Shown one piece after another: positions 3,891 through 50,985 of a DNA stretch of 64,000 nucleotides; the stretch's first letter is position 1, and every line of letters begins with the position of its first letter. The notes beneath the pieces were generated by a model, which ran no database searches, had not been told where the DNA came from, and saw only the letters and a program-made list of their open reading frames with translations. The translations under genes were made by a program, and so were the position numbers. The stretch comes from Macrostomum lignano (lineage: Eukaryota): contig NIVC01003500.1 of the NCBI GenBank assembly GCA_002269645.1, forward strand, positions 1 to 64,000, read 5' to 3'.

Positions 3891-5024
3891 TCGCTCAGCG
3901 GTTGGATGCCGGGTTTCACCATCAGAGCGACAGCGGTGCATGGGTAGCGAATTTTGAGCAAGAAACGCAGCAGAGCCCTGCAGGCTGCATGTAAAGAGGT
4001 TACATGTACATGTATCCAATATCGTAAGGGTTAAGTAACATAGGGAAGGAGCTCAGGATATACATGTAGCTAGGGTAGATATTGTAGCAGAAAAATTACG
4101 AACTTGACTAGCTTAGGCATTTGGCAGCAACACACGGGGGGGGGTAAATTTTTAAGCTTTCGCCTCGAAGATTTTTCAATTTCTCCTCCCCGTTTCAGTC
4201 TTAACAACTCACTTTCCACACTCTGGTGCAGATTTGACCATGGACAGACACCCAGCGGTTCAAATCATCATGGCAACGACATTCAGACACTGACCGGTCA
4301 TTGTTGGAAAATTCCATCTTTACTTTGGGAAAAACGCAGCAATAATAAGATAGCTCGTACTAAAGACAGAACAAACATGTCCGAGGGTGCAAGCGCCTGA
4401 GTTCATCAACACCAACAACTTAAATATGAAGCAGCAACAATGCAATGGATTCTCTGGGCTTACTGTGTTTAATTGCATGTCGATCCCTCTCGCCTGTTGT
4501 ACCATTGCGACCGGCCAAGAGAATGGCCGGGTATTCGTTTGTTCCTCGTTTAGACAACTGAAATGAAGCCACTGTTCTGATCTAAACAGATCTAAATCAG
4601 CTTCCCGTAAATCACTCTGCAGTCCGCTCAGCTCCGTGATTCCATGCATAGCGGCTGAACACGATTTGCGTTTTGTCTTTCCTCTCATTGTCAATCTCTA
4701 TTCGATCGAATCGCTGAACTTGCGCAGGAAGTCGATGTCTGCATCTTGGTCGCTTTGACGCAACTCCTAGCTCCATGAATGCGGCTGTTTCATGCTTCCA
4801 GTAGCATTTGAAAACGGCAGGTCGTTCTAGGGAGATGCTCTGTTCCTAGATAGAGATGCGCGCGTATTTTTGAAGCAAGATCTTAGCGACCTCTTCTAGC
4901 CATAGATATTTGAAGCTACAGGCCTTCTGATGTTTCTATAAGCTATTAAGCTAAACTGAAATTAACCGACACCTTTGAGTTCCATTTTTAACAGACGAAA
5001 AAATTGAATAGCCAGGGCGGGGCC

Positions 5025-7363
5025 ATGTCGCACTCGATGCGCAGCTTCAACAGCAACACCTCCAACGGCAACTCCACGCTGCGCCGGATGGGCGGGCCCT
5101 CCTGGCTGCGCGGCACGCCGTCCAGCAGGTCGTCCAGCGGCAGTCGGGACACCTTGGCCGCGGCGCAGCCTCCGCCTCAGATGCAGCAGCAGCGAAAGTC
5201 CTTCAGACGCGCCTGGGAGGCTGAGCCCGACAGCTGGACGCAGTCAACTTCGGTCTATTCCCACCGGGCTGCGTCAATCAGCAGCCACCAGTCGGCCTTC
5301 GTCTTCCCCACCTGGACGGTGGGCAACGCGGTGAGCGACAGCGCCAGCACGGCCTCGTGCGGAGGTGGCAGCCGGCGCCTGGACACCAACTCGAACTGCT
5401 CGCAGGCGCCCGAAGATCGGCGCACCAGGAATCCGGAGCTGGACGATCAGCGCAATTTGAGCTCCGGCGGAGGCGCCAGGTGGGCAGAAGACGGCAGACA
5501 TCCGCCGCAGAGCCGCTACCAGGACTCGCGAGCTGCCTACTCACAGGAAGAGGCGCCAAGATATGCAGACAACCAGCGCAGTGGGTACCCGGACAGTCAG
5601 CAGCACTCGCGAGCCCCCTATCAACATGAGCAGGAGACAAAATGCGCAGACAACCAGCGTGGCAGGTATCCAGACAGCTGGCAGATCCGCTTCCAGGACT
5701 CGCGGCCTCCCTACCCGCCGGAACAGGAGCCAAGGTGCGCAGACAACCAGCGCAGCGGGTACCCGGACAGTCGGCCCAGCCGCTTCCAGGACTCGCGAGC
5801 TCCTTACCGACAGGAAGAGGAGCAAAGGTGCGCAGACAGGTACCCAGGTGGGGACCGGGCACCGGTCAGCCAGTATCCGACAGCAGCGCCACCCATGAAT
5901 TGCCGTCCGCCAGCCGCTGCTGTCCAGCAGGCACCGGTAAGGTCGACTCCAGTGCAGCCCGCGACGCAGCCTCCGCCACCTCCGCAGCCGCCGCCCCCAC
6001 AACAGCCGCAGCCGCCGCCGCCGCCGCCGCAGCCACAGCCACAGCCGCAGCCACAGCAACCGCAGCCGCAGCCGCACATTCCGCCCGGTGTTCAGGGCAA
6101 TCCGATGATGATGCCGCAGATGCCGCAGATGCAGCAGCTACCGGCTCAAGACCCTCAGCGGAATGCTCCAGCCCTTGCTGCATCGGGCTACCCGCCTCAA
6201 GGCCAGCACAGCCGGTTCGGCGCTTCCATGTTCGACGACCCGGTCGGCGAAGGTCAGGACGACGAGTTCGGGCCGCCGCCGCCAAACTTTAGCAACTTGG
6301 ACTCCGCCTGGCCGAACATGTCCGGCGGACTGGAGAACTGGCCGGCCAACATGGACAGCGGCTGGGTGGACCCCGTGGCCAACTTTGCCAAGATTGTCCA
6401 GCAGGACCCCGTGAATGACAAGGACGAGTGGGAGCTGCCTGAGAACTGGGGCGATCTGGACGTCCCACCAACTTATCCACAGAACATGATGCTGGACCCC
6501 GGCTTTGAAGGCAATGGCGGCTTCGGTTCCTTCAACAACTTCAATTCAGCCTTCATGGGTCGAGGCGGTGGTGTCGGCGGGGGCGGCGGCGGTGGAGGGG
6601 CGGCGGTGGGGGCGGTGGCGAAGGCGGCCTCGGCAGCGGCTTTGCTAGCGGCCTTGATGATGATCTAGACAATGGTCTCAGTAACGGAATCGGTAGTGGC
6701 CTTGGCAACGGCCTTGGCAACAGCCTTGGCAACGGTCTCAGTAACGGCCTCGGTAGGGGCCTTGGCAACGGCCTTGGCAACGGCCTTGGCAACGGCCTTG
6801 GAAACGGCCTTGGCAACGGCCTTGGCAACGGCCTTGGCAACGGCCTTGGCAACGGCCTTGGCAACGGCCTTGGCAACGGCCTCGGTAGTGGCCTTGGCAA
6901 CGGCCTTGGTAACGGCTTTGGCCACGGCCTTGGCAACGGCCTTGGCAACGGTCTTGGCAACGGCCTTCGCAACGGCCTTGGCAACGGTCTTGGCAACGGC
7001 TTTGGTAACGGCCCTGACAACGGCCTTGACAACGGATTTGGCAACGGCCTTAGCAACGGTTTCGGCAAAGGCCTTGGCAAAGGATTCAACAACGGCCTCG
7101 GCATGGACCTTCTCAATAACGGCCTCGGTAGAAGCAGACTGGGCGGAGGGCTGGGCAATGGTTTCGGCAGCCGAGGCCCTGGCCGTGGCGGCGGCAGCAA
7201 CAGAGGCGGCCCCTGCAGCGACTCAATGGACTTTGAACTGGACGGCCTGTGTCCGGCGAGGCAGAAGTCCGGCGCGGATTTCGGCGGCGCAGGGTTCGGT
7301 GGCAACTGGTGCTCGCAGATGGGCAGCTTTCAGCAGCAGGGAAGGAACTTCGGATTCATGTAG
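5025..7363 (+). CDS. Intronless low-complexity protein (~780 aa): S/R-rich, QRSGYPDS repeats, P/Q tract, Trp/acidic segment, GLGN repeats; one apparent frameshift
   Basis: ORF 5004-6668 (ATG 5025) continues after a frame change in the G-rich run near 6580-6610 into an open GLGN-repeat frame ending ...GRNFGFM* at 7363 (ORF 7103-7363 is its tail). Acceptor-like TTTTAACAG at 4986-4994. Confidence 0.55.
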
Positions 7364-45651: not shown

Positions 45652-47078
45652 GTGAGCTGCAGTCAGGGTGTCTCTGGTTTATCAGTGAGCTGCAGTCAGG
45701 GTGTCTCTGGTTTATCAGTGAGCTGCAGTCAGGGTGTCTCTGGTTTATCAGTGAGCTGCAGTCAGGGTGTCTCTGGTTTATCAGTGAGCTGCAGTCAGGG
45801 TGTCTCTGGTTTATCAGTGAGCTGCAGTCAGGGTGTCTCTGGTTTATCAGTGAGCTGCAGTCTGAGTGTCTCTGGTTTATCAGTGAGCTGCAGTCAGGGT
45901 GTCTCTGGTTTATCAGTGAGCTGCAGTCAGGGTGTCTCTGGTTTATCAGTGAGCTGCAGTCTGAGTGTCTCTGGTTTATCAGTGAGCTGCAGTCAGGGTG
46001 TCTCTGGTTTATCAGTGAGCTGCAGTCAGGGTGTCTCTGGTTTATCAGTGAGCTGCAGTCAGGGTGTCTCTGGTTTATCAGTGAGCTGCAGTCTGAGTGT
46101 CTCTGGTTTATCAGTGAGCTGCAGTCAGGGTGTCTCTGGTTTATCAGTGAGCTGCAGTCTGAGTGTCTCTGGTTTATCAGTGAGCTGCAGTCTGAGTGTC
46201 TCTGGTTTATCAGTGAGCTGCAGTCAGGGTGTCTCTGGTTTATCAGTGAGCTGCAGTCTGAGTGTCTCTGGTTTATCAGTGAGCTGCAGTCAGGGTGTCT
46301 CTGGTTTATCAGTGAGCTGCAGTCTGAGTGTCTCTGGTTTATCAGTGAGCTGCAGTCAGGGTGTCTCTGGTTTATCAGTGAGCTGCAGTCAGGGTGTCTC
46401 TGGTTTATCAGTGAGCTGCAGTCTGAGTGTCTCTGGTTTATCAGTGAGCTGCAGTCAGGGTGTCTCTGGTTTATCAGTGAGCTGCAGTCAGGGTGTCTCT
46501 GGTTTATCGGTGAGCTGCAGTCAGGGTGTCTCTGGTTTATCAGTGAGCTGCAGTCAGGGTGTCTCTGGTTTATCGGTGAGCTGCAGTCAGGGTGTCTCTG
46601 GTTTATCAGTGAGCTGCAGTCTGAGTGTCTCTGGTTTATCAGTGAGCTGCAGTCTTAAGAGTCTCTGGTTTATCAGTGAGCTGCAGTCTTAAGAGTCTCT
46701 GGTTTATCAGTGAGCTGCAGTCTTAAGAGTCTCTGGTTTATCAGTGAGCTGCAGTCAGGGTGTCTCTGGTTTATCAGTGAGCTGCAGTCTTAAGAGTCTC
46801 TGGTTTATCAGTGAGCTGCAGTCTTAAGAGTCTCTGGTTTATCAGTGAGCTGCAGTCTTAAGAGTCTCTGGTTTATCAGTGAGCTGCAGTCTTAAGAGTC
46901 TCTGGTTTATCAGTGAGCTGCAGTCTTAAGAGTCTCTGGTTTATCAGTGAGCTGCAGTCTTAAGAGTCTCTGGTTTATCAGTGAGCTGCAGTCTTAAGAG
47001 TCTCTGGTTTATCAGTGAGCTGCAGTCAGGGTGTCTCTGGTTTATCAGTGAGCTGCAGTCTTAAGAGTCTCTGGTTTA
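45652..47078. repeat. Minisatellite, 33 bp x ~43, three sequence variants, abutting GATC
   Basis: GTGAGCTGCAGTC(AGGGT/TGAGT/TTAAG..)..TCTCTGGTTTATCA units. Confidence 0.95.
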
Positions 47079-47130
47079 TCTCCTTCTGCTGCGTGCACTG
47101 CCACGTGCACTGTTGTTGCTAGGGCCGCAG

Positions 47131-47655
47131 CGGCCCTGGCAACGGCTTCCCCGGCATCTCTGCAGCAGCTCGAGCAGCTCATGCGGCGCCGCTGACTCCC
47201 CGCCCGCCGGCCGCCGCTGCCGCCACCGTCTGGTGCCCGACGCTCCTACGTGGCGCAACGTTGCGGACTCCGAGCTTCCCCCGCCCACCGCCATCGACTC
47301 GGACACGATCGCCCTGCTCGAGCGGCTGTCCCTCGTCCAGTTTGACACCGCGGACACTGTCCGAGTGGTGGCTGAGGCTGTCCGGTTCGCTGACGAGCTT
47401 CGCCTGGTGCACGCTGGTCCTGAGGTCGAACCGATGACCTCTCTGCCGGAGGCCTGGGGCTGGCGGTGCCCGTTGCGCGCGGACACCCCGGCGGAGCAGC
47501 CCAGAACGGCCGTGCTGAGCAACGCGGCCCAGACCGAGGAGCACTACTTTGTGGCTCCGCCAGGCAACATCGCCGCCAAGGACTCCGGCAGGGAGCGCCT
47601 GGACCGGCTGGCCGAGGGCGCCAAGTCGAAGGCGTCCCGGTCGTCAAGAAGCTGA
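47131..47655 (+). CDS. GATC: Glu-tRNA(Gln) amidotransferase subunit C, mitochondrial (no genomic ATG found)
   Basis: VPDAPTW...IDSDTIALLERLSLVQF...AEAVRFADEL...VEPMTS...LRAD...VLSNAAQTEEHYFVAPPGNI. Arg/Ser-rich presequence-like N-terminus. In-frame TAA at 47062; the first in-frame Met is internal. Acceptor GGCCGCAG ends at 47130 in phase 0. Confidence 0.85.
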   Translation, partial: RPWQRLPRHLCSSSSSSCGAADSPPAGRRCRHRLVPDAPTWRNVADSELPPPTAIDSDTIALLERLSLVQFDTADTVRVVAEAVRFADELRLVHAGPEVEPMTSLPEAWGWRCPLRADTPAEQPRTAVLSNAAQTEEHYFVAPPGNIAAKDSGRERLDRLAEGAKSKASRSSRS

Positions 47656-48159
47656 ACAGCTGGGATTAGAAAATCCAAACTCTTGTAGTTGCTATGCAAA
47701 TGTTCCAATCTGACCAAAATACACCGCATGCCGTTTGTAATCATTGCCACTCTGCTACAGATCAGCCGATGATTGAAGAAACAAAAAAGGCCTCAAGCCG
47801 TGCTTTTCGTGTTTCACGTGAAAACTGCCTGTTCTCAAAGCCTGCTGGCGGGGGTCATTATGAGCTGAAGCCACGCTGCTGCTGGAGTTGTTGGATCATT
47901 CTGGAAAATTCCACCTTTTTTACCGGAGGTAATGATCTTAGGGCCGGTTTTTTATCCTTCAGTTGGCAGCGGGAGGGCACGCTCTTGGGGTGGAAAAGAG
48001 CAGCACTGCCGGGTCGGGATTCGAGCTGCGACCCCACCTGCTTTGCGTCATCATTAAAGATTTCCTGTTGCGCGTGCTGGCTGCCCCCGCTTCCCGTCCC
48101 CATCCTGCAGCGCCTCTCGCTCGCTTCCTGCAATTAGATTTGCTAATTGTCGACTTTAG

Positions 48160-48242
48160 CGACAGGGCAAATACCCGCACGAGTACTTGCTGAACCAGCC
48201 CTCGCTCGCTGCGGTCAGCCGCGAATGGGGAGCCAGACTGGC

Positions 48243-48313
<71 letters not shown>

Positions 48314-49204
48314 TAGACAGACAGACAGACAGACAGAAAGACACTAACACAGACAGACTGACAGACAGACAGAAAGACGGAAAGACAGACAGACAGACAG
48401 ACAGCCTTGCTTCTATTCGTCACGATTCTGATTCCCACAGCCGCCAGTCCCCATCAGTGCCCACCGGCCCCTAGCCGGGATTCGAGTCCTGGACCTCACC
48501 CGGGTGCTTGCCGGGCCCTACTGCTCAATGATCCTGGGCGATATGGGCGCAGATGTTATCAAGGTGGAGCGGCCGGGCGGCGGGGACGAGACCCGGCAGT
48601 GGGGGCCGCCGTTCGCGGCCGAGGACTCCGTGTACTTCCTGAGTGTCAACCGCAACAAGCGCAGCGTCTGCCTGGACTTCGGCCAACCGGCCGGGGCCGA
48701 CCTGGTCCGCCGGCTGTCCCGGCGCTGCGACGTCCTGCTGGAGAACTTCGTGCCCGGCAAGCTGGCGAAGCGCGGGCTGGACTTTGCCTCGCTGAGCGCC
48801 CAGAATCCCGGCCTCATCTACTGCAGCATCTCCGGCTTCGGCCAGTCCGGGCCGTGGCGCCGGCGGGCCGGCTACGACGTCGCCGCGGCTGCCATCGGCG
48901 GCTTCCTCGGCATCACCGGCGAGCCCGACGGTCCGCCCGTCCGGGCCGGGGTGGCCGTCACGGACCTGTCCACCGGCCTGTATGCCCTGTCCGCCATCCT
49001 GGCCGCCCTGTACCGGCGGCGGACGGCCGAGAGTCTGGGGGAGGTCGGCCGGGGCTGCTGGATCGACGCCAACCTGCTGGACACCCAGGTGGCCACAATG
49101 TCGCATGTGGCTGCCAGCTTCCTGCACACCGGTTAGGGGCTCAGAGTCTGTCTGTCTGTCTGTCCGTCTGTCTGCCTGTCTGTCTGTCTGTCTGTCTGTC
49201 GGCC

Positions 49205-49244
<40 letters not shown>

Positions 49245-49331
49245 AGCCTGTCAGTCAGCCTGTCTTAGTGTCTGTCTGTCTGCCCTGCCCTGTCTGTCTG
49301 TCTGTCTTGTCTGTCTGTCTGTCTGTCTTAG

Positions 49332-49366
<35 letters not shown>

Positions 49367-50044
49367 GTCTGTCTGTCAGCCTGTCTGTCTGTCTGTCTTA
49401 GTGTCTGTCTGTCTGCCTGTCTGCCTGTCTGTCTGTCTGTCTTAGTGTCTGTCTGTCTGCCTGTCTGTCCATCACAGAACCCACTGACCCTCGCAGGCCA
49501 GGAGCCGAGCCGCTGGGGCACAGGGCACGCCAACCTCGCGCCCTACCAGGCCTTCGATACCAGCGACCGCCGCCAACTCATCCTGGGCGCCGGCAACGAC
49601 CGCCAATTCGGCGTCCTCTGCCGCCGGCTCGGCGCTCCCCACCTAGCAACGGATCCTCGCTTCCTTAGCAACCGGCTGCGGGTTGCTAACCGGACGAGCC
49701 TGATCCCGCTGATTCAGGCCCTGGTGCGCGCCCGGCCGCTGGCGGATTGGCTGGCGACGCTGGAGGGCTCCGACCTGCCGTACGGCCCGGTGAACACTGT
49801 GGCGGAGGCCCTGGCCAGCCCGCCGGTGGCAGATCCGGCCAGTGGCCTGCTGGTCACCTGCGAACACCCGGCGGCCGGCCGGGTCACCGCTCCGGGTCCC
49901 GCTGTCCGTTTTGACGGCCGGCGCGGTGAAGTGACGCGGCCGCCGCCCAGGCTGGGTGAGCACACTGACGAGGTGCTCGGCGAGCTGCTGGACTGCGGCT
50001 GCGAGGAGCTGCTGGAGCTGCGGCGGGGGAAAGTGATCGCCTGA
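48160..50044 (+). CDS. SUGCT: Family III CoA-transferase (CaiB/BaiF), succinyl-CoA:glutarate CoA-transferase-like; 5' end uncertain
   Basis: Exons 48441-49131 and 49497-50044, plus a probable small first exon 48160-48213. Motifs [112 protein letters not shown]. Confidence 0.88.
48240..49470. repeat. Two opposed (GACA)n / (TGTC)n microsatellites in SUGCT introns
   Basis: (GACA)n at ~48240-48400 and (TCTG)n at ~49145-49470. Confidence 0.9.
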
Positions 50045-50274
50045 CTGCAGACTTCATTTGAGCTCTCCGATTTGCACTTTAACCTTTAATTTTCTAGTTC
50101 TGCTGCGGCAGAAGTCAAATAGCGATGGTAATAAAATTATCTAGGATAAGATGTTTCATTCTAAACATATTTAATGCCTACAGAATACGTTTTTACGCTT
50201 TTATGTTTCAATAATAGTATACTTTTTCGCTCATTTTGATCGACAAAAGCAATATAGTTATACAGTAGTCCTAT

Positions 50275-50985
50275 GTTTAAGATTGGCTAGATTAGCAATC
50301 CATTCTATTCCAATTAATTACTATAGTGTTGGCTAGATTAGCAATCCATTCTATTCCAATTCATTACTATAGTGTTGGCTAGATTAGCAATCCATTCTAT
50401 TCCAATTCATTACTATAGTGTTGGCTAGATTAGCAATCCATTCTATTCCAATTCATTATTATAGTGTTGGCTAGATTAGCAATCCATTCTATTCCAATTA
50501 ATTACTATAGTGTTGGCTAGATTAGCAATCCATTCTATTCCAATTCATTACTATAGTGTTGGCTAGATTAGCAATCCATTCTATTCCAGTTCATTACTAT
50601 AGTGTTGGCTAGATTAGCAATCCATTCTATTCCAATGCATTACTATAGTGTTGGCTAGATTAGCAATCCATTATATTCCAATTCATTACTATAGTGTTGG
50701 CTAGATTAGCAATCCATTCTATTCCAATTCATTACTATAGTGTTGGCTAGATTAGCAATCCATTCTATTCCAATTCATTACTATAGTGTTGGCTAGATTA
50801 GCAATCCATTCTATTCCAATGCATTACTATAGTGTTGGCTAGATTAGCAATCCATTCTATTCCAATGCATTACTATAGTGTTGGCTAGATTAGCAATCCA
50901 TTCTATTCCAATTCATTACTATAGTGTTGGCTAGATTAGCAATCCATTCTATTCCAATTCATTGCTATATTGTTGGCTAGATTAG
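50275..50985. repeat. Minisatellite, 46 bp x ~15
   Basis: TTGGCTAGATTAGCAATCCATTCTATTCCAATTCATTACTATAGTG units. Confidence 0.95.

What the first reader, a model, noticed from the sequence alone, without database searches (positions are those of the whole stretch)
48140..48520. SUGCT also lacks an ATG and both candidate acceptors are in frame with an SL-derived AUG
Seen: branch-like CTAAT then ACTTTAG (48159), a 54-nt open exon 48160-48213 (RQGKYPHEYLLNQPSLAA), donor gtcagc, a (GACA)n-filled intron, and acceptor CCCACAG (48440) in phase 0 into PPVPISAHRPLAGIRVLDL. The first acceptor TAG is itself an in-frame stop, and I found no ATG-bearing upstream exon. Inference: a second adjacent SL-AUG-initiated gene. 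In-frame acceptors also precede the ORFs at 4995 and 8041. The predicted N-terminus is not an obvious mitochondrial presequence, so localisation may differ from the mammalian enzyme.
Basis: partly seen in the sequence, partly recalled or inferred. Interest (0 to 1): 0.7.

Follow-up and report, generated by a model that had tools for sequence, protein, structure and literature searches.

The report
Flatworm SUGCT gene started by spliced-leader AUG
This is the SUGCT (CoA-transferase) gene of the flatworm Macrostomum lignano; it has no start codon of its own and most likely takes its AUG from the trans-spliced leader, a mechanism already known in flatworms, so it is a fairly ordinary case.

Summary
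The window is Macrostomum lignano contig NIVC01003500.1, bases 1-64000. The gene is a two-exon SUGCT orthologue (48441-49131 and 49497-50044, 412 codons). It matches Pfam CoA_transf_3 over its full length and human SUGCT at E 1.6e-124.

The reading frame opens at 48432, just after an in-frame TGA. It has no ATG before Met30, which lies inside the conserved core. The acceptor CCCACAG| ends at 48440, in phase 0.

The M. lignano spliced leader (SL) ends in ...TTGCATG. The GenBank transcript-based model (PAA51120.1, '5'-partial') and two UniProt-listed models all begin at PPVP, that is at 48441. So the second acceptor is the supported one. The SL AUG would give M-PPVPISAHRPLAGIRVLDL.

The first candidate (acceptor at 48159 plus a 54-nt exon) is not supported:
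- It is one of 48 such in-frame mini-exons that can be built in this spacer.
- Its three differences between paralogues are all nonsynonymous, against 9 synonymous to 1 in the CDS (p = 0.014).
- No gene model includes it.

SUGCT lies 785 nt downstream of an ATG-less GatC gene that shares its transcriptional-unit name, which is operon-like. Initiation from the SL AUG has been known in flatworms since 2006. I could not reach any SL-junction reads, so the evidence is indirect.

The parts
47098..47655 (+). Upstream neighbour: GatC-like gene, annotated as a 5'-partial CDS with no usable ATG
   Evidence: Pfam GatC match. Gene range. The exact protein is in GenBank, and its paralogue is named Mlig016554g2, partial. 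The ORF is open from 47065 and its first in-frame ATG, at 47434, lies inside the domain.
47656..48440 (+). Intercistronic spacer / outron, removed when the SL is added
   Evidence: No GT[AG]AG donor. It differs from the paralogues by 2.2-2.6% plus frame-breaking indels. No gene is annotated here.
48053..48058 (+). ATTAAA, the only poly(A)-signal-like hexamer in the spacer; a possible 3'-end signal for GatC (inferred)
48160..48213 (+).
   Evidence: One of 48 constructible in-frame mini-exons. Its 3 of 54 differences from the paralogues are all nonsynonymous, against 9 synonymous to 1 nonsynonymous in the CDS (Fisher p = 0.014). The donor GTCAGC is non-consensus. It is absent from all gene models.
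48234..48404 (+). (CAGA/GACA)n microsatellite in the outron
   Evidence: TRF: 42.8 copies. Its length varies among the paralogues.
48406..48440 (+). Pyrimidine-rich tract (72% C+T), CTGAT branch-like motif and acceptor CCCACAG; the proposed SL trans-splice acceptor
   Evidence: Identical in all three paralogues. Composition. The annotated CDS starts at the next base. In-frame TGA at 48429-48431.
48441..49131 (+). SUGCT exon A (codons 1-230 and the first base of codon 231), starting PPVPISAHRPLAGIRVLDL
   Evidence: Identical to PAA51120.1.
49132..49496 (+). Cis intron (GT...AG) filled with (GTCT/TGTC)n
   Evidence: Splice sites. TRF array 49146-49469. The same intron is only 80 nt in the paralogues.
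49497..50044 (+). SUGCT exon B, with TGA stop at 50042-50044
50130..50135 (+). AATAAA, the likely SUGCT poly(A) signal (inferred)

Best explanation
The locus is the SUGCT (succinyl-CoA:glutarate / succinate-hydroxymethylglutarate CoA-transferase) gene of Macrostomum lignano. It is the downstream gene of an operon-like GatC-SUGCT transcription unit.

Proposed mechanism:
1. The pre-mRNA is cut out of the precursor by trans-splicing. The 35-nt spliced leader (...AATTTATTGCATG) is joined to the acceptor CCCACAG| at 48440/48441. The 785-nt spacer, with its (GACA)n array, is discarded as outron.
2. The gene has an in-frame TGA nine bases upstream of the acceptor. It has no ATG before Met30, which lies inside the CoA-binding core. 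The acceptor is in phase 0.
3. The AUG that ends the leader therefore becomes the initiator. The product is M-PPVPISAHRPLAGIRVLDL..., 413 residues.

Shown here: the gene's identity, its exon structure, the absence of an own ATG, the phase, and the annotated transcript start.
Inferred: that the 5' end at 48441 is an SL junction, and that ribosomes start at the SL AUG.

The resulting protein has only 13 residues before the conserved GIRVLDL strand. It therefore lacks the 30-69-residue N-terminal extension of other metazoan SUGCTs.
For: Identity and structure:
- Window 38441-60044 is identical to record positions 38441-60044 of M. lignano contig NIVC01003500.1, so window and record coordinates coincide.
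- The spliced 412-codon product matches Pfam CoA_transf_3 end to end (E 1.4e-119). It matches human SUGCT 9br6 at E 1.6e-124, with the alignment starting at residue 7.
- The frame opens at 48432 after a TGA. The first in-frame ATG is codon 30.

Transcript start:
- GenBank PAA51120.1 'Mlig033298g2, partial' is identical to my translation from 48441. Its gene range is 48441-50044.
- UniProt-listed models A0A1I8GLV7 and A0A1I8GL80 also start at PPVP.
- The Mlig_3_7 annotation cuts transcriptional units at sites where SL-containing reads map (PMC5730564).

Spliced leader:
- The M. lignano SL ends in ATG (PMC8629364).
- The SL AUG is used as initiator in flatworms. In Schistosoma mansoni it is in frame in 28% of trans-spliced mRNAs and more than 40 cDNAs need it (PMC9851317; PMC12582326).
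- The Macrostomum SL ATG is called a translation start codon in PMC10468722.

Operon-like context:
- GatC and SUGCT share the unit name Mlig016554 (g2 and g3) at the paralogous locus.
- The spacer has no consensus donor.
- The stop-to-acceptor spacer is 785 nt, or 614 nt without the microsatellite. The annotated gene-to-gene distance can only be shorter, because it excludes the GatC 3' UTR. This is under the 1000-nt operon threshold of PMC8629364.
- The 35 nt before the acceptor are identical in all three paralogues.
Against: - No SL-junction read or cDNA was seen. A search for short transcript-derived proteins found none.
- Annotated 5' ends in this assembly are not exact. The paralogous SUGCT model (PAA85555.1) starts 12 nt further downstream although the DNA is identical. 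The same genes start 6-12 nt apart in their paralogous copies, GatC by 6 nt, and not at an AG.
- A second CAG, 7 nt downstream (48445-48447), would put the SL AUG out of frame.
- The acceptor matches the reported [T/C]TNCAG trans-splice motif only in part.
- The SL AUG has U at -3, a weak context.
- An in-frame acceptor is expected one time in three by chance.
Confidence: 0.8

Rival explanations
1. The SL is added at the first candidate acceptor (ACTTTAG|, 48159/48160). The 54-nt exon 48160-48213 is then cis-spliced to 48441, giving M-RQGKYPHEYLLNQPSLAA-PPVP...
For: The frame is open and in phase. CTAAT is branch-like. The site lies about 100 nt after the ATTAAA at 48053, which is the commonest repeat-adjusted operon spacing. 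The longer N-terminus (31 residues before GIRVLDL) is closer to the metazoan range.
Against: It is one of 48 equally constructible mini-exons. All three paralogue differences are nonsynonymous (Q>E, H>Y, Y>C), unlike the CDS (Fisher p = 0.014). The donor GTCAGC is non-consensus. All three gene models that reach the N-terminus start at 48441, although an open upstream exon would have extended a 5'-partial ORF.
Confidence: 0.05
2. A conventional, not yet annotated upstream cis exon supplies an ATG (and perhaps a mitochondrial presequence) and is spliced to the 48440 acceptor. This could be the main mRNA or an alternative isoform alongside the SL form.
For: Parasitic flatworms often share acceptors between cis- and trans-splicing (PMC12582326). 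Twelve ATG-started phase-0 exons can be drawn in the spacer, for example 47728-47736 with donor GTAATC. Other metazoan SUGCTs carry a long N-terminal extension.
Against: There is no GT[AG]AG donor between 47049 and 48440. The long spacer ORF is frame-broken in the paralogues. The GatC gene occupies the upstream region. No model includes such an exon.
Confidence: 0.08
3. The SL AUG is not used. Translation starts at Met30/Met35 or at a near-cognate codon, or this copy is not productively translated.
For: The SL AUG context is weak (U at -3). One UniProt-listed model (A0A1I8HNM0) starts at MILGDMG. The L003 paralogue carries a premature stop, so some copies are decaying.
Against: Starting at Met30 would delete the conserved GIRVLDLTRVLAGPY strand and loop, which align residue for residue with human SUGCT. 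The window copy and L002 differ by 9 synonymous and 1 nonsynonymous changes, which indicates purifying selection. There is no other AUG between the cap-proximal SL AUG and Met30.
Confidence: 0.05

Closest known systems
[quoted passage not shown]
   Same: The SL ends in AUG. The acceptor is in phase with an ORF that lacks its own AUG upstream of conserved residues, and the SL AUG is the first AUG of the mRNA.
   Different: The documented cases are mainly in Schistosoma mansoni and other parasitic flatworms. For this Macrostomum gene neither the junction nor the initiation has been shown directly.
Human SUGCT (C7orf10; PDB 9br6/9br7), CoA-transferase family III
   Same: About 50% identity over the whole domain. 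The GIRVLDLTRVLAGP N-terminal motif and the TDL Asp motif are retained.
   Different: No own ATG and no long N-terminal extension. One intron, against the many of the vertebrate gene (the latter from my own knowledge). Lineage-specific 6-residue and 2-residue insertions.
SL-resolved operons of M. lignano (Ustyantsev & Berezikov 2021, PMC8629364) and of C. elegans
   Same: Same-strand neighbours less than 1 kb apart, the downstream gene starting at an acceptor with no upstream donor, and a shared transcriptional-unit name.
   Different: The spacer is inflated by a microsatellite. M. lignano has a single SL, not a specialised SL2 as in C. elegans.

Membership tests
CoA-transferase family III / SUGCT | Full-length match to the family profile | tested here: met
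   PF02515, E 1.4e-119, profile positions 1-366 of 366.
CoA-transferase family III / SUGCT | Closest solved relative is SUGCT rather than FRC, CaiB or AMACR | tested here: met
   9br6 SUGCT scores 419 bits against 309 for the next entry. The top named database hits are metazoan SUGCTs.
CoA-transferase family III / SUGCT | Conserved active-site Asp (the TD motif) and N-terminal GxRVLDL...AGP motif | tested here: met
   AVTDLSTGLYA and GIRVLDLTRVLAGP align with the human and bacterial sequences. That this Asp is the catalytic residue comes from knowledge of the family and was not tested here.
CoA-transferase family III / SUGCT | Vertical metazoan orthology | tested here: inconclusive
   A neighbour-joining tree places it on a long branch outside the metazoan cluster. 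Its signature residues (LTRVLAGP, FLSVNRNK, PGKL, PYGPVN) are of the metazoan type.
SL-AUG-initiated flatworm mRNA | The species' SL ends in AUG | tested here: met
   The SL sequence CGGTCTCTTACTGCGAAGACTCAATTTATTGCATG is given in PMC8629364. The species was identified.
SL-AUG-initiated flatworm mRNA | The SL is joined at the acceptor immediately upstream of the ORF | not testable with these tools
   Only indirect evidence: three gene models start at 48441, and the annotation pipeline uses SL reads. No reads were available.
SL-AUG-initiated flatworm mRNA | The SL AUG is in frame with the ORF | tested here: met
   48441 is codon position 1 of PPVPISAHR....
SL-AUG-initiated flatworm mRNA | No own in-frame AUG upstream of conserved residues | tested here: met
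   TGA at 48429-48431. The first ATG is codon 30, inside the domain.
SL-AUG-initiated flatworm mRNA | The protein begins with the SL-encoded Met | not testable with these tools
   Needs N-terminal proteomics or ribosome profiling.
M. lignano operon (criteria of PMC8629364) | Adjacent same-strand genes less than 1000 bp apart after repeats are subtracted, with the downstream gene trans-spliced | tested here: met
   The distance and strand criteria are met: 785 nt from stop to acceptor, 614 nt without the TRF array, and the gene-to-gene distance the criterion uses can only be shorter. GatC and SUGCT share the name Mlig016554. Trans-splicing of the downstream gene is itself inferred.

The most novel reading that the evidence does not exclude
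In the Macrostomum lineage the ancestral first exon of SUGCT (its ATG plus a mitochondrial presequence) was lost and functionally replaced by the spliced leader. The enzyme now starts 13 residues before its catalytic domain and is either cytosolic or imported by a non-canonical signal. If this is general, in-frame SL AUGs would be a route by which trans-splicing rewrites N-termini and relocates conserved enzymes.
Probability: 0.25. Interest if true: 0.45.

Novelty: new member of a known kind. Interest (0 to 1): 0.22.

Why it matters
The practical gain is for annotation. GenBank lists this protein and its GatC neighbour as '5'-partial', although they are probably complete once the SL-encoded Met is added. 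The same will apply to many other M. lignano genes.

The biological interest is modest. It is a clean example of a conserved metabolic enzyme that depends on the SL for its start codon. It also raises a testable question: does loss of the usual N-terminal extension change where SUGCT works in this flatworm?

Tried and rejected
- Rfam scan and tRNA scan of the whole window: nothing.
- Search for an SL RNA gene in the window (last 20 nt of the SL, up to 3 mismatches): none.
- Second protein search with the N-terminal 125 residues, to find short transcript-derived proteins that might carry the SL-Met or an upstream exon: no near-identical hit. Junction reads could therefore not be inspected.
- Supplement searches for the gene identifiers: nothing held or no hits.
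- Cheng et al. 2006 and the 2015 genome paper are not in the library. They are cited only through papers that cite them.
- The upstream 147-codon ORF 47694-48137 as a source of an ATG exon: rejected, because it is frame-broken by indels in the paralogues and has no good donor.
- A GatC-SUGCT cis-fusion: there are phase-0 GTs inside GatC, but none is GT[AG]AG and no model supports it.
- Bacterial origin of the gene as an explanation for the short N-terminus: the neighbour-joining tree is uninformative (long branch), and the signature residues are of the metazoan type.
- Functional pairing of the inverted (GACA)n and (TGTC)n arrays: the downstream array is expanded only in this copy, so it is probably neutral.

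Full report
**Where the window comes from.** A protein search with the spliced product returned Macrostomum lignano proteins at 100% identity. The exact 412-residue sequence is GenBank PAA51120.1, 'BOX15_Mlig033298g2, partial'. It is encoded at positions 48441-50044 of contig NIVC01003500.1 in assembly GCA_002269645.1 (Mlig_3_7). The fetched locus, record positions 38441-60044, is identical to window 38441-60044. Window coordinates are therefore record coordinates. [quoted passage not shown] The 35-nt leader is CGGTCTCTTACTGCGAAGACTCAATTTATTGCATG (PMC8629364).

**Checking the observation.**
- CTAAT and ACTTTAG, the latter ending at 48159.
- An open 54-nt stretch, 48160-48213 (RQGKYPHEYLLNQPSLAA), followed by GTCAGC.
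- A (CAGA)n array at 48234-48404.
- CCCACAG ending at 48440, in phase 0 with PPVPISAHRPLAGIRVLDL.

The gene model is exon A 48441-49131, a GT...AG intron 49132-49496 filled with (GTCT)n, and exon B 49497-50044. The product matches Pfam CoA_transf_3 over the whole profile (E 1.4e-119). It matches the human SUGCT structure 9br6 at E 1.6e-124, and that alignment already begins at residue 7. The frame is closed by TGA at 48429-48431. The first in-frame ATGs are codons 30 and 35, inside the conserved GIRVLDLTRVLAGPYCSMILGD segment. So the gene has no usable start codon of its own.

**Which acceptor.** The two candidates do not carry equal weight.

The first, with its 54-nt exon, was built to fit:
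- In the 785-nt spacer, 27 of 69 AG sites start one or more of 48 open AG...GT mini-exons that stay in frame with both an SL-AUG and 48441.
- Two paralogous loci were fetched: L002 (NIVC01000319.1) and L003 (NIVC01001389.1). The window copy differs from them at 3 of the 54 positions, all nonsynonymous (Q>E, H>Y, Y>C). The 1239-nt CDS differs from L002 by 9 synonymous and 1 nonsynonymous change (Fisher p = 0.014).
- The stretch therefore evolves like the surrounding non-coding spacer, which differs by 2.2-2.6% and carries indels.

The second acceptor has better support:
- It is preceded by a 72% pyrimidine tract and a CTGAT branch-like motif.
- The 35 nt before it are identical in all three paralogues.
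- Three gene models begin with PPVP, that is at base 48441: PAA51120.1 and the UniProt-listed entries A0A1I8GLV7 and A0A1I8GL80.

The Mlig_3_7 annotation was made by cutting RNA-seq transcriptional units at positions where trimmed SL-containing reads map, and ORFs were then called with TransDecoder (PMC5730564). My inference is that a 5'-partial ORF starting at the first base after an AG means the mature transcript body starts there. An in-frame open upstream exon, had it been part of the transcript, would have extended the ORF.

**Caveat on annotation precision.** The 5' ends in this annotation are not exact:
- The L002 SUGCT model starts 12 nt further downstream (ISAHR...), although the DNA is identical.
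- The GatC models start 6 nt apart in the paralogues and not at an AG. Another neighbouring gene starts after its own ATG in one copy.

The agreement of three models on 48441 is good evidence but not proof. I could not reach any reads. A second protein search aimed at short transcript-derived fragments found none.

**No cis exon with an ATG.** Twelve ATG-started open exons with a phase-0 GT can be drawn in the spacer. None has the GT[AG]AG donor typical of M. lignano (PMC8629364). There is in fact no GT[AG]AG on the + strand anywhere between 47049 and 48440. The 147-codon ORF 47694-48137, which supplies most of these candidates, is frame-broken by indels in L002 and L003. An acceptor with no upstream donor in cis is the classical definition of an outron (Conrad et al. 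1993, as summarised in PMC8629364).

**Context: an operon-like pair.**
- A GatC-like gene (Pfam GatC) ends at 47655, which is 785 nt upstream on the same strand.
- It too is annotated 5'-partial. It has no in-frame ATG before codon 124 of its open frame.
- At the paralogous locus, GatC is named Mlig016554g2 and SUGCT Mlig016554g3. The two are unrelated in sequence, so a shared prefix implies that they were cut from the same transcriptional unit or unit cluster (naming rule in PMC5730564).
- The spacer is 614 nt once the microsatellite is subtracted. The gene-to-gene distance used by the criterion can only be shorter, since it excludes the GatC 3' UTR. This is below the 1000-nt operon criterion of PMC8629364.
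- The only poly(A)-signal-like hexamer in the spacer is ATTAAA at 48053.

**Mechanism.**
- Shown: gene identity, exon structure, absence of an own ATG, phase-0 acceptor, annotated transcript start, and an SL that ends in ATG.
- Inferred: the SL is joined at 48440/48441, so the mRNA reads ...UUGCAUG|CCGCCAGUC.... The SL AUG is the first AUG of the mRNA, and the next one is Met30. It initiates a 413-residue protein, M-PPVPISAHRPLAGIRVLDL....
[quoted passage not shown] 2006, as reported in PMC9851317; also PMC12582326; PMC5832876). The Macrostomum genome paper PMC10468722 calls the final ATG of the SL a translation start codon.
- Competing site: a CAG 7 nt downstream (exon start 48448) would put the SL AUG out of frame. 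The first AG after the branch region is normally the one chosen (general splicing knowledge).

**N-terminus and localisation.** With the SL Met there are 13 residues before GIRVLDL. Bacterial homologues have 6. Other metazoan SUGCTs of 425 or more residues have a median near 49, and most lie between 30 and 69. No targeting predictor was available, so localisation remains open.

The short N-terminus is not explained by a bacterial origin of the gene. A quick neighbour-joining tree only shows a long branch. The signature residues (LTRVLAGP, FLSVNRNK, PGKL, PYGPVN) are of the metazoan type.

**Verdict.** The mechanism is already known in flatworms, so this is a new example of a known kind. Its value is mainly for annotation: the 'partial' proteins are probably complete once the SL Met is counted. 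A modest open question remains about the lost N-terminal extension. My confidence in the SL-AUG explanation is about 0.8, limited by the lack of direct junction reads.

Noticed in passing
window 46800-47131: A 34-bp tandem repeat (8.3 or more copies, 95% matches; each unit carries CTGCAG and TAA) runs right up to the ATG-less GatC ORF, which is open from 47065. In-frame AGs give possible exon starts at 47068 and 47131. An SL-AUG at 47068 would give MSLVYLLLLRALPRALLLLGPQRPWQRLPRH..., which looks like a presequence. The annotated partial CDS starts at 47098, which is not at an AG.
   Followed up: partly
window 48234-48404 and 49146-49469: Exon A is flanked by inverted microsatellites, (CAGA)n upstream and (GTCT)n in the intron, with arms of up to 140 nt that are 84-93% complementary. 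In paralogues L002 and L003 the intron is only 80 nt. The arrangement is therefore specific to this copy and probably a neutral expansion.
   Followed up: partly
L003 (NIVC01001389.1), SUGCT codon 121: This third paralogue has CAG>TAG at codon 121. That explains its 193-residue annotated ORF (PAA68531.1). It is either a decaying duplicate or an assembly error.
   Followed up: partly
L001, L002 and L003 gene starts (e.g. L002 19698 minus strand; L001 15382): Nearly all annotated CDSs in these loci are 5'-partial. Starts differ by 6-12 nt between near-identical paralogues. In one gene (TAVGKMPSPP...) a CTGCAG acceptor lies 2 nt upstream of the annotated start. An SL AUG there would be out of frame with the gene's own ATG, 15 nt into the annotated CDS (17 nt past the acceptor).
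   Followed up: no
window 47694-48137: A 147-codon ATG-started ORF lies in the GatC-SUGCT spacer. It is frame-broken by indels in both paralogues, so it is not coding.
   Followed up: yes
An AG at 4993-4994 gives an in-frame exon start at 4995. This ORF, however, has its own in-frame ATG at 5025, so it does not need an SL AUG. The 8041 example was not resolved: the frame through 8041 reaches a stop within a few codons.
   Followed up: partly
window 50283-50600: A 46-bp tandem repeat (6.9 or more copies, 97% matches) lies in the AT-rich region just downstream of the SUGCT 3' end.
   Followed up: no
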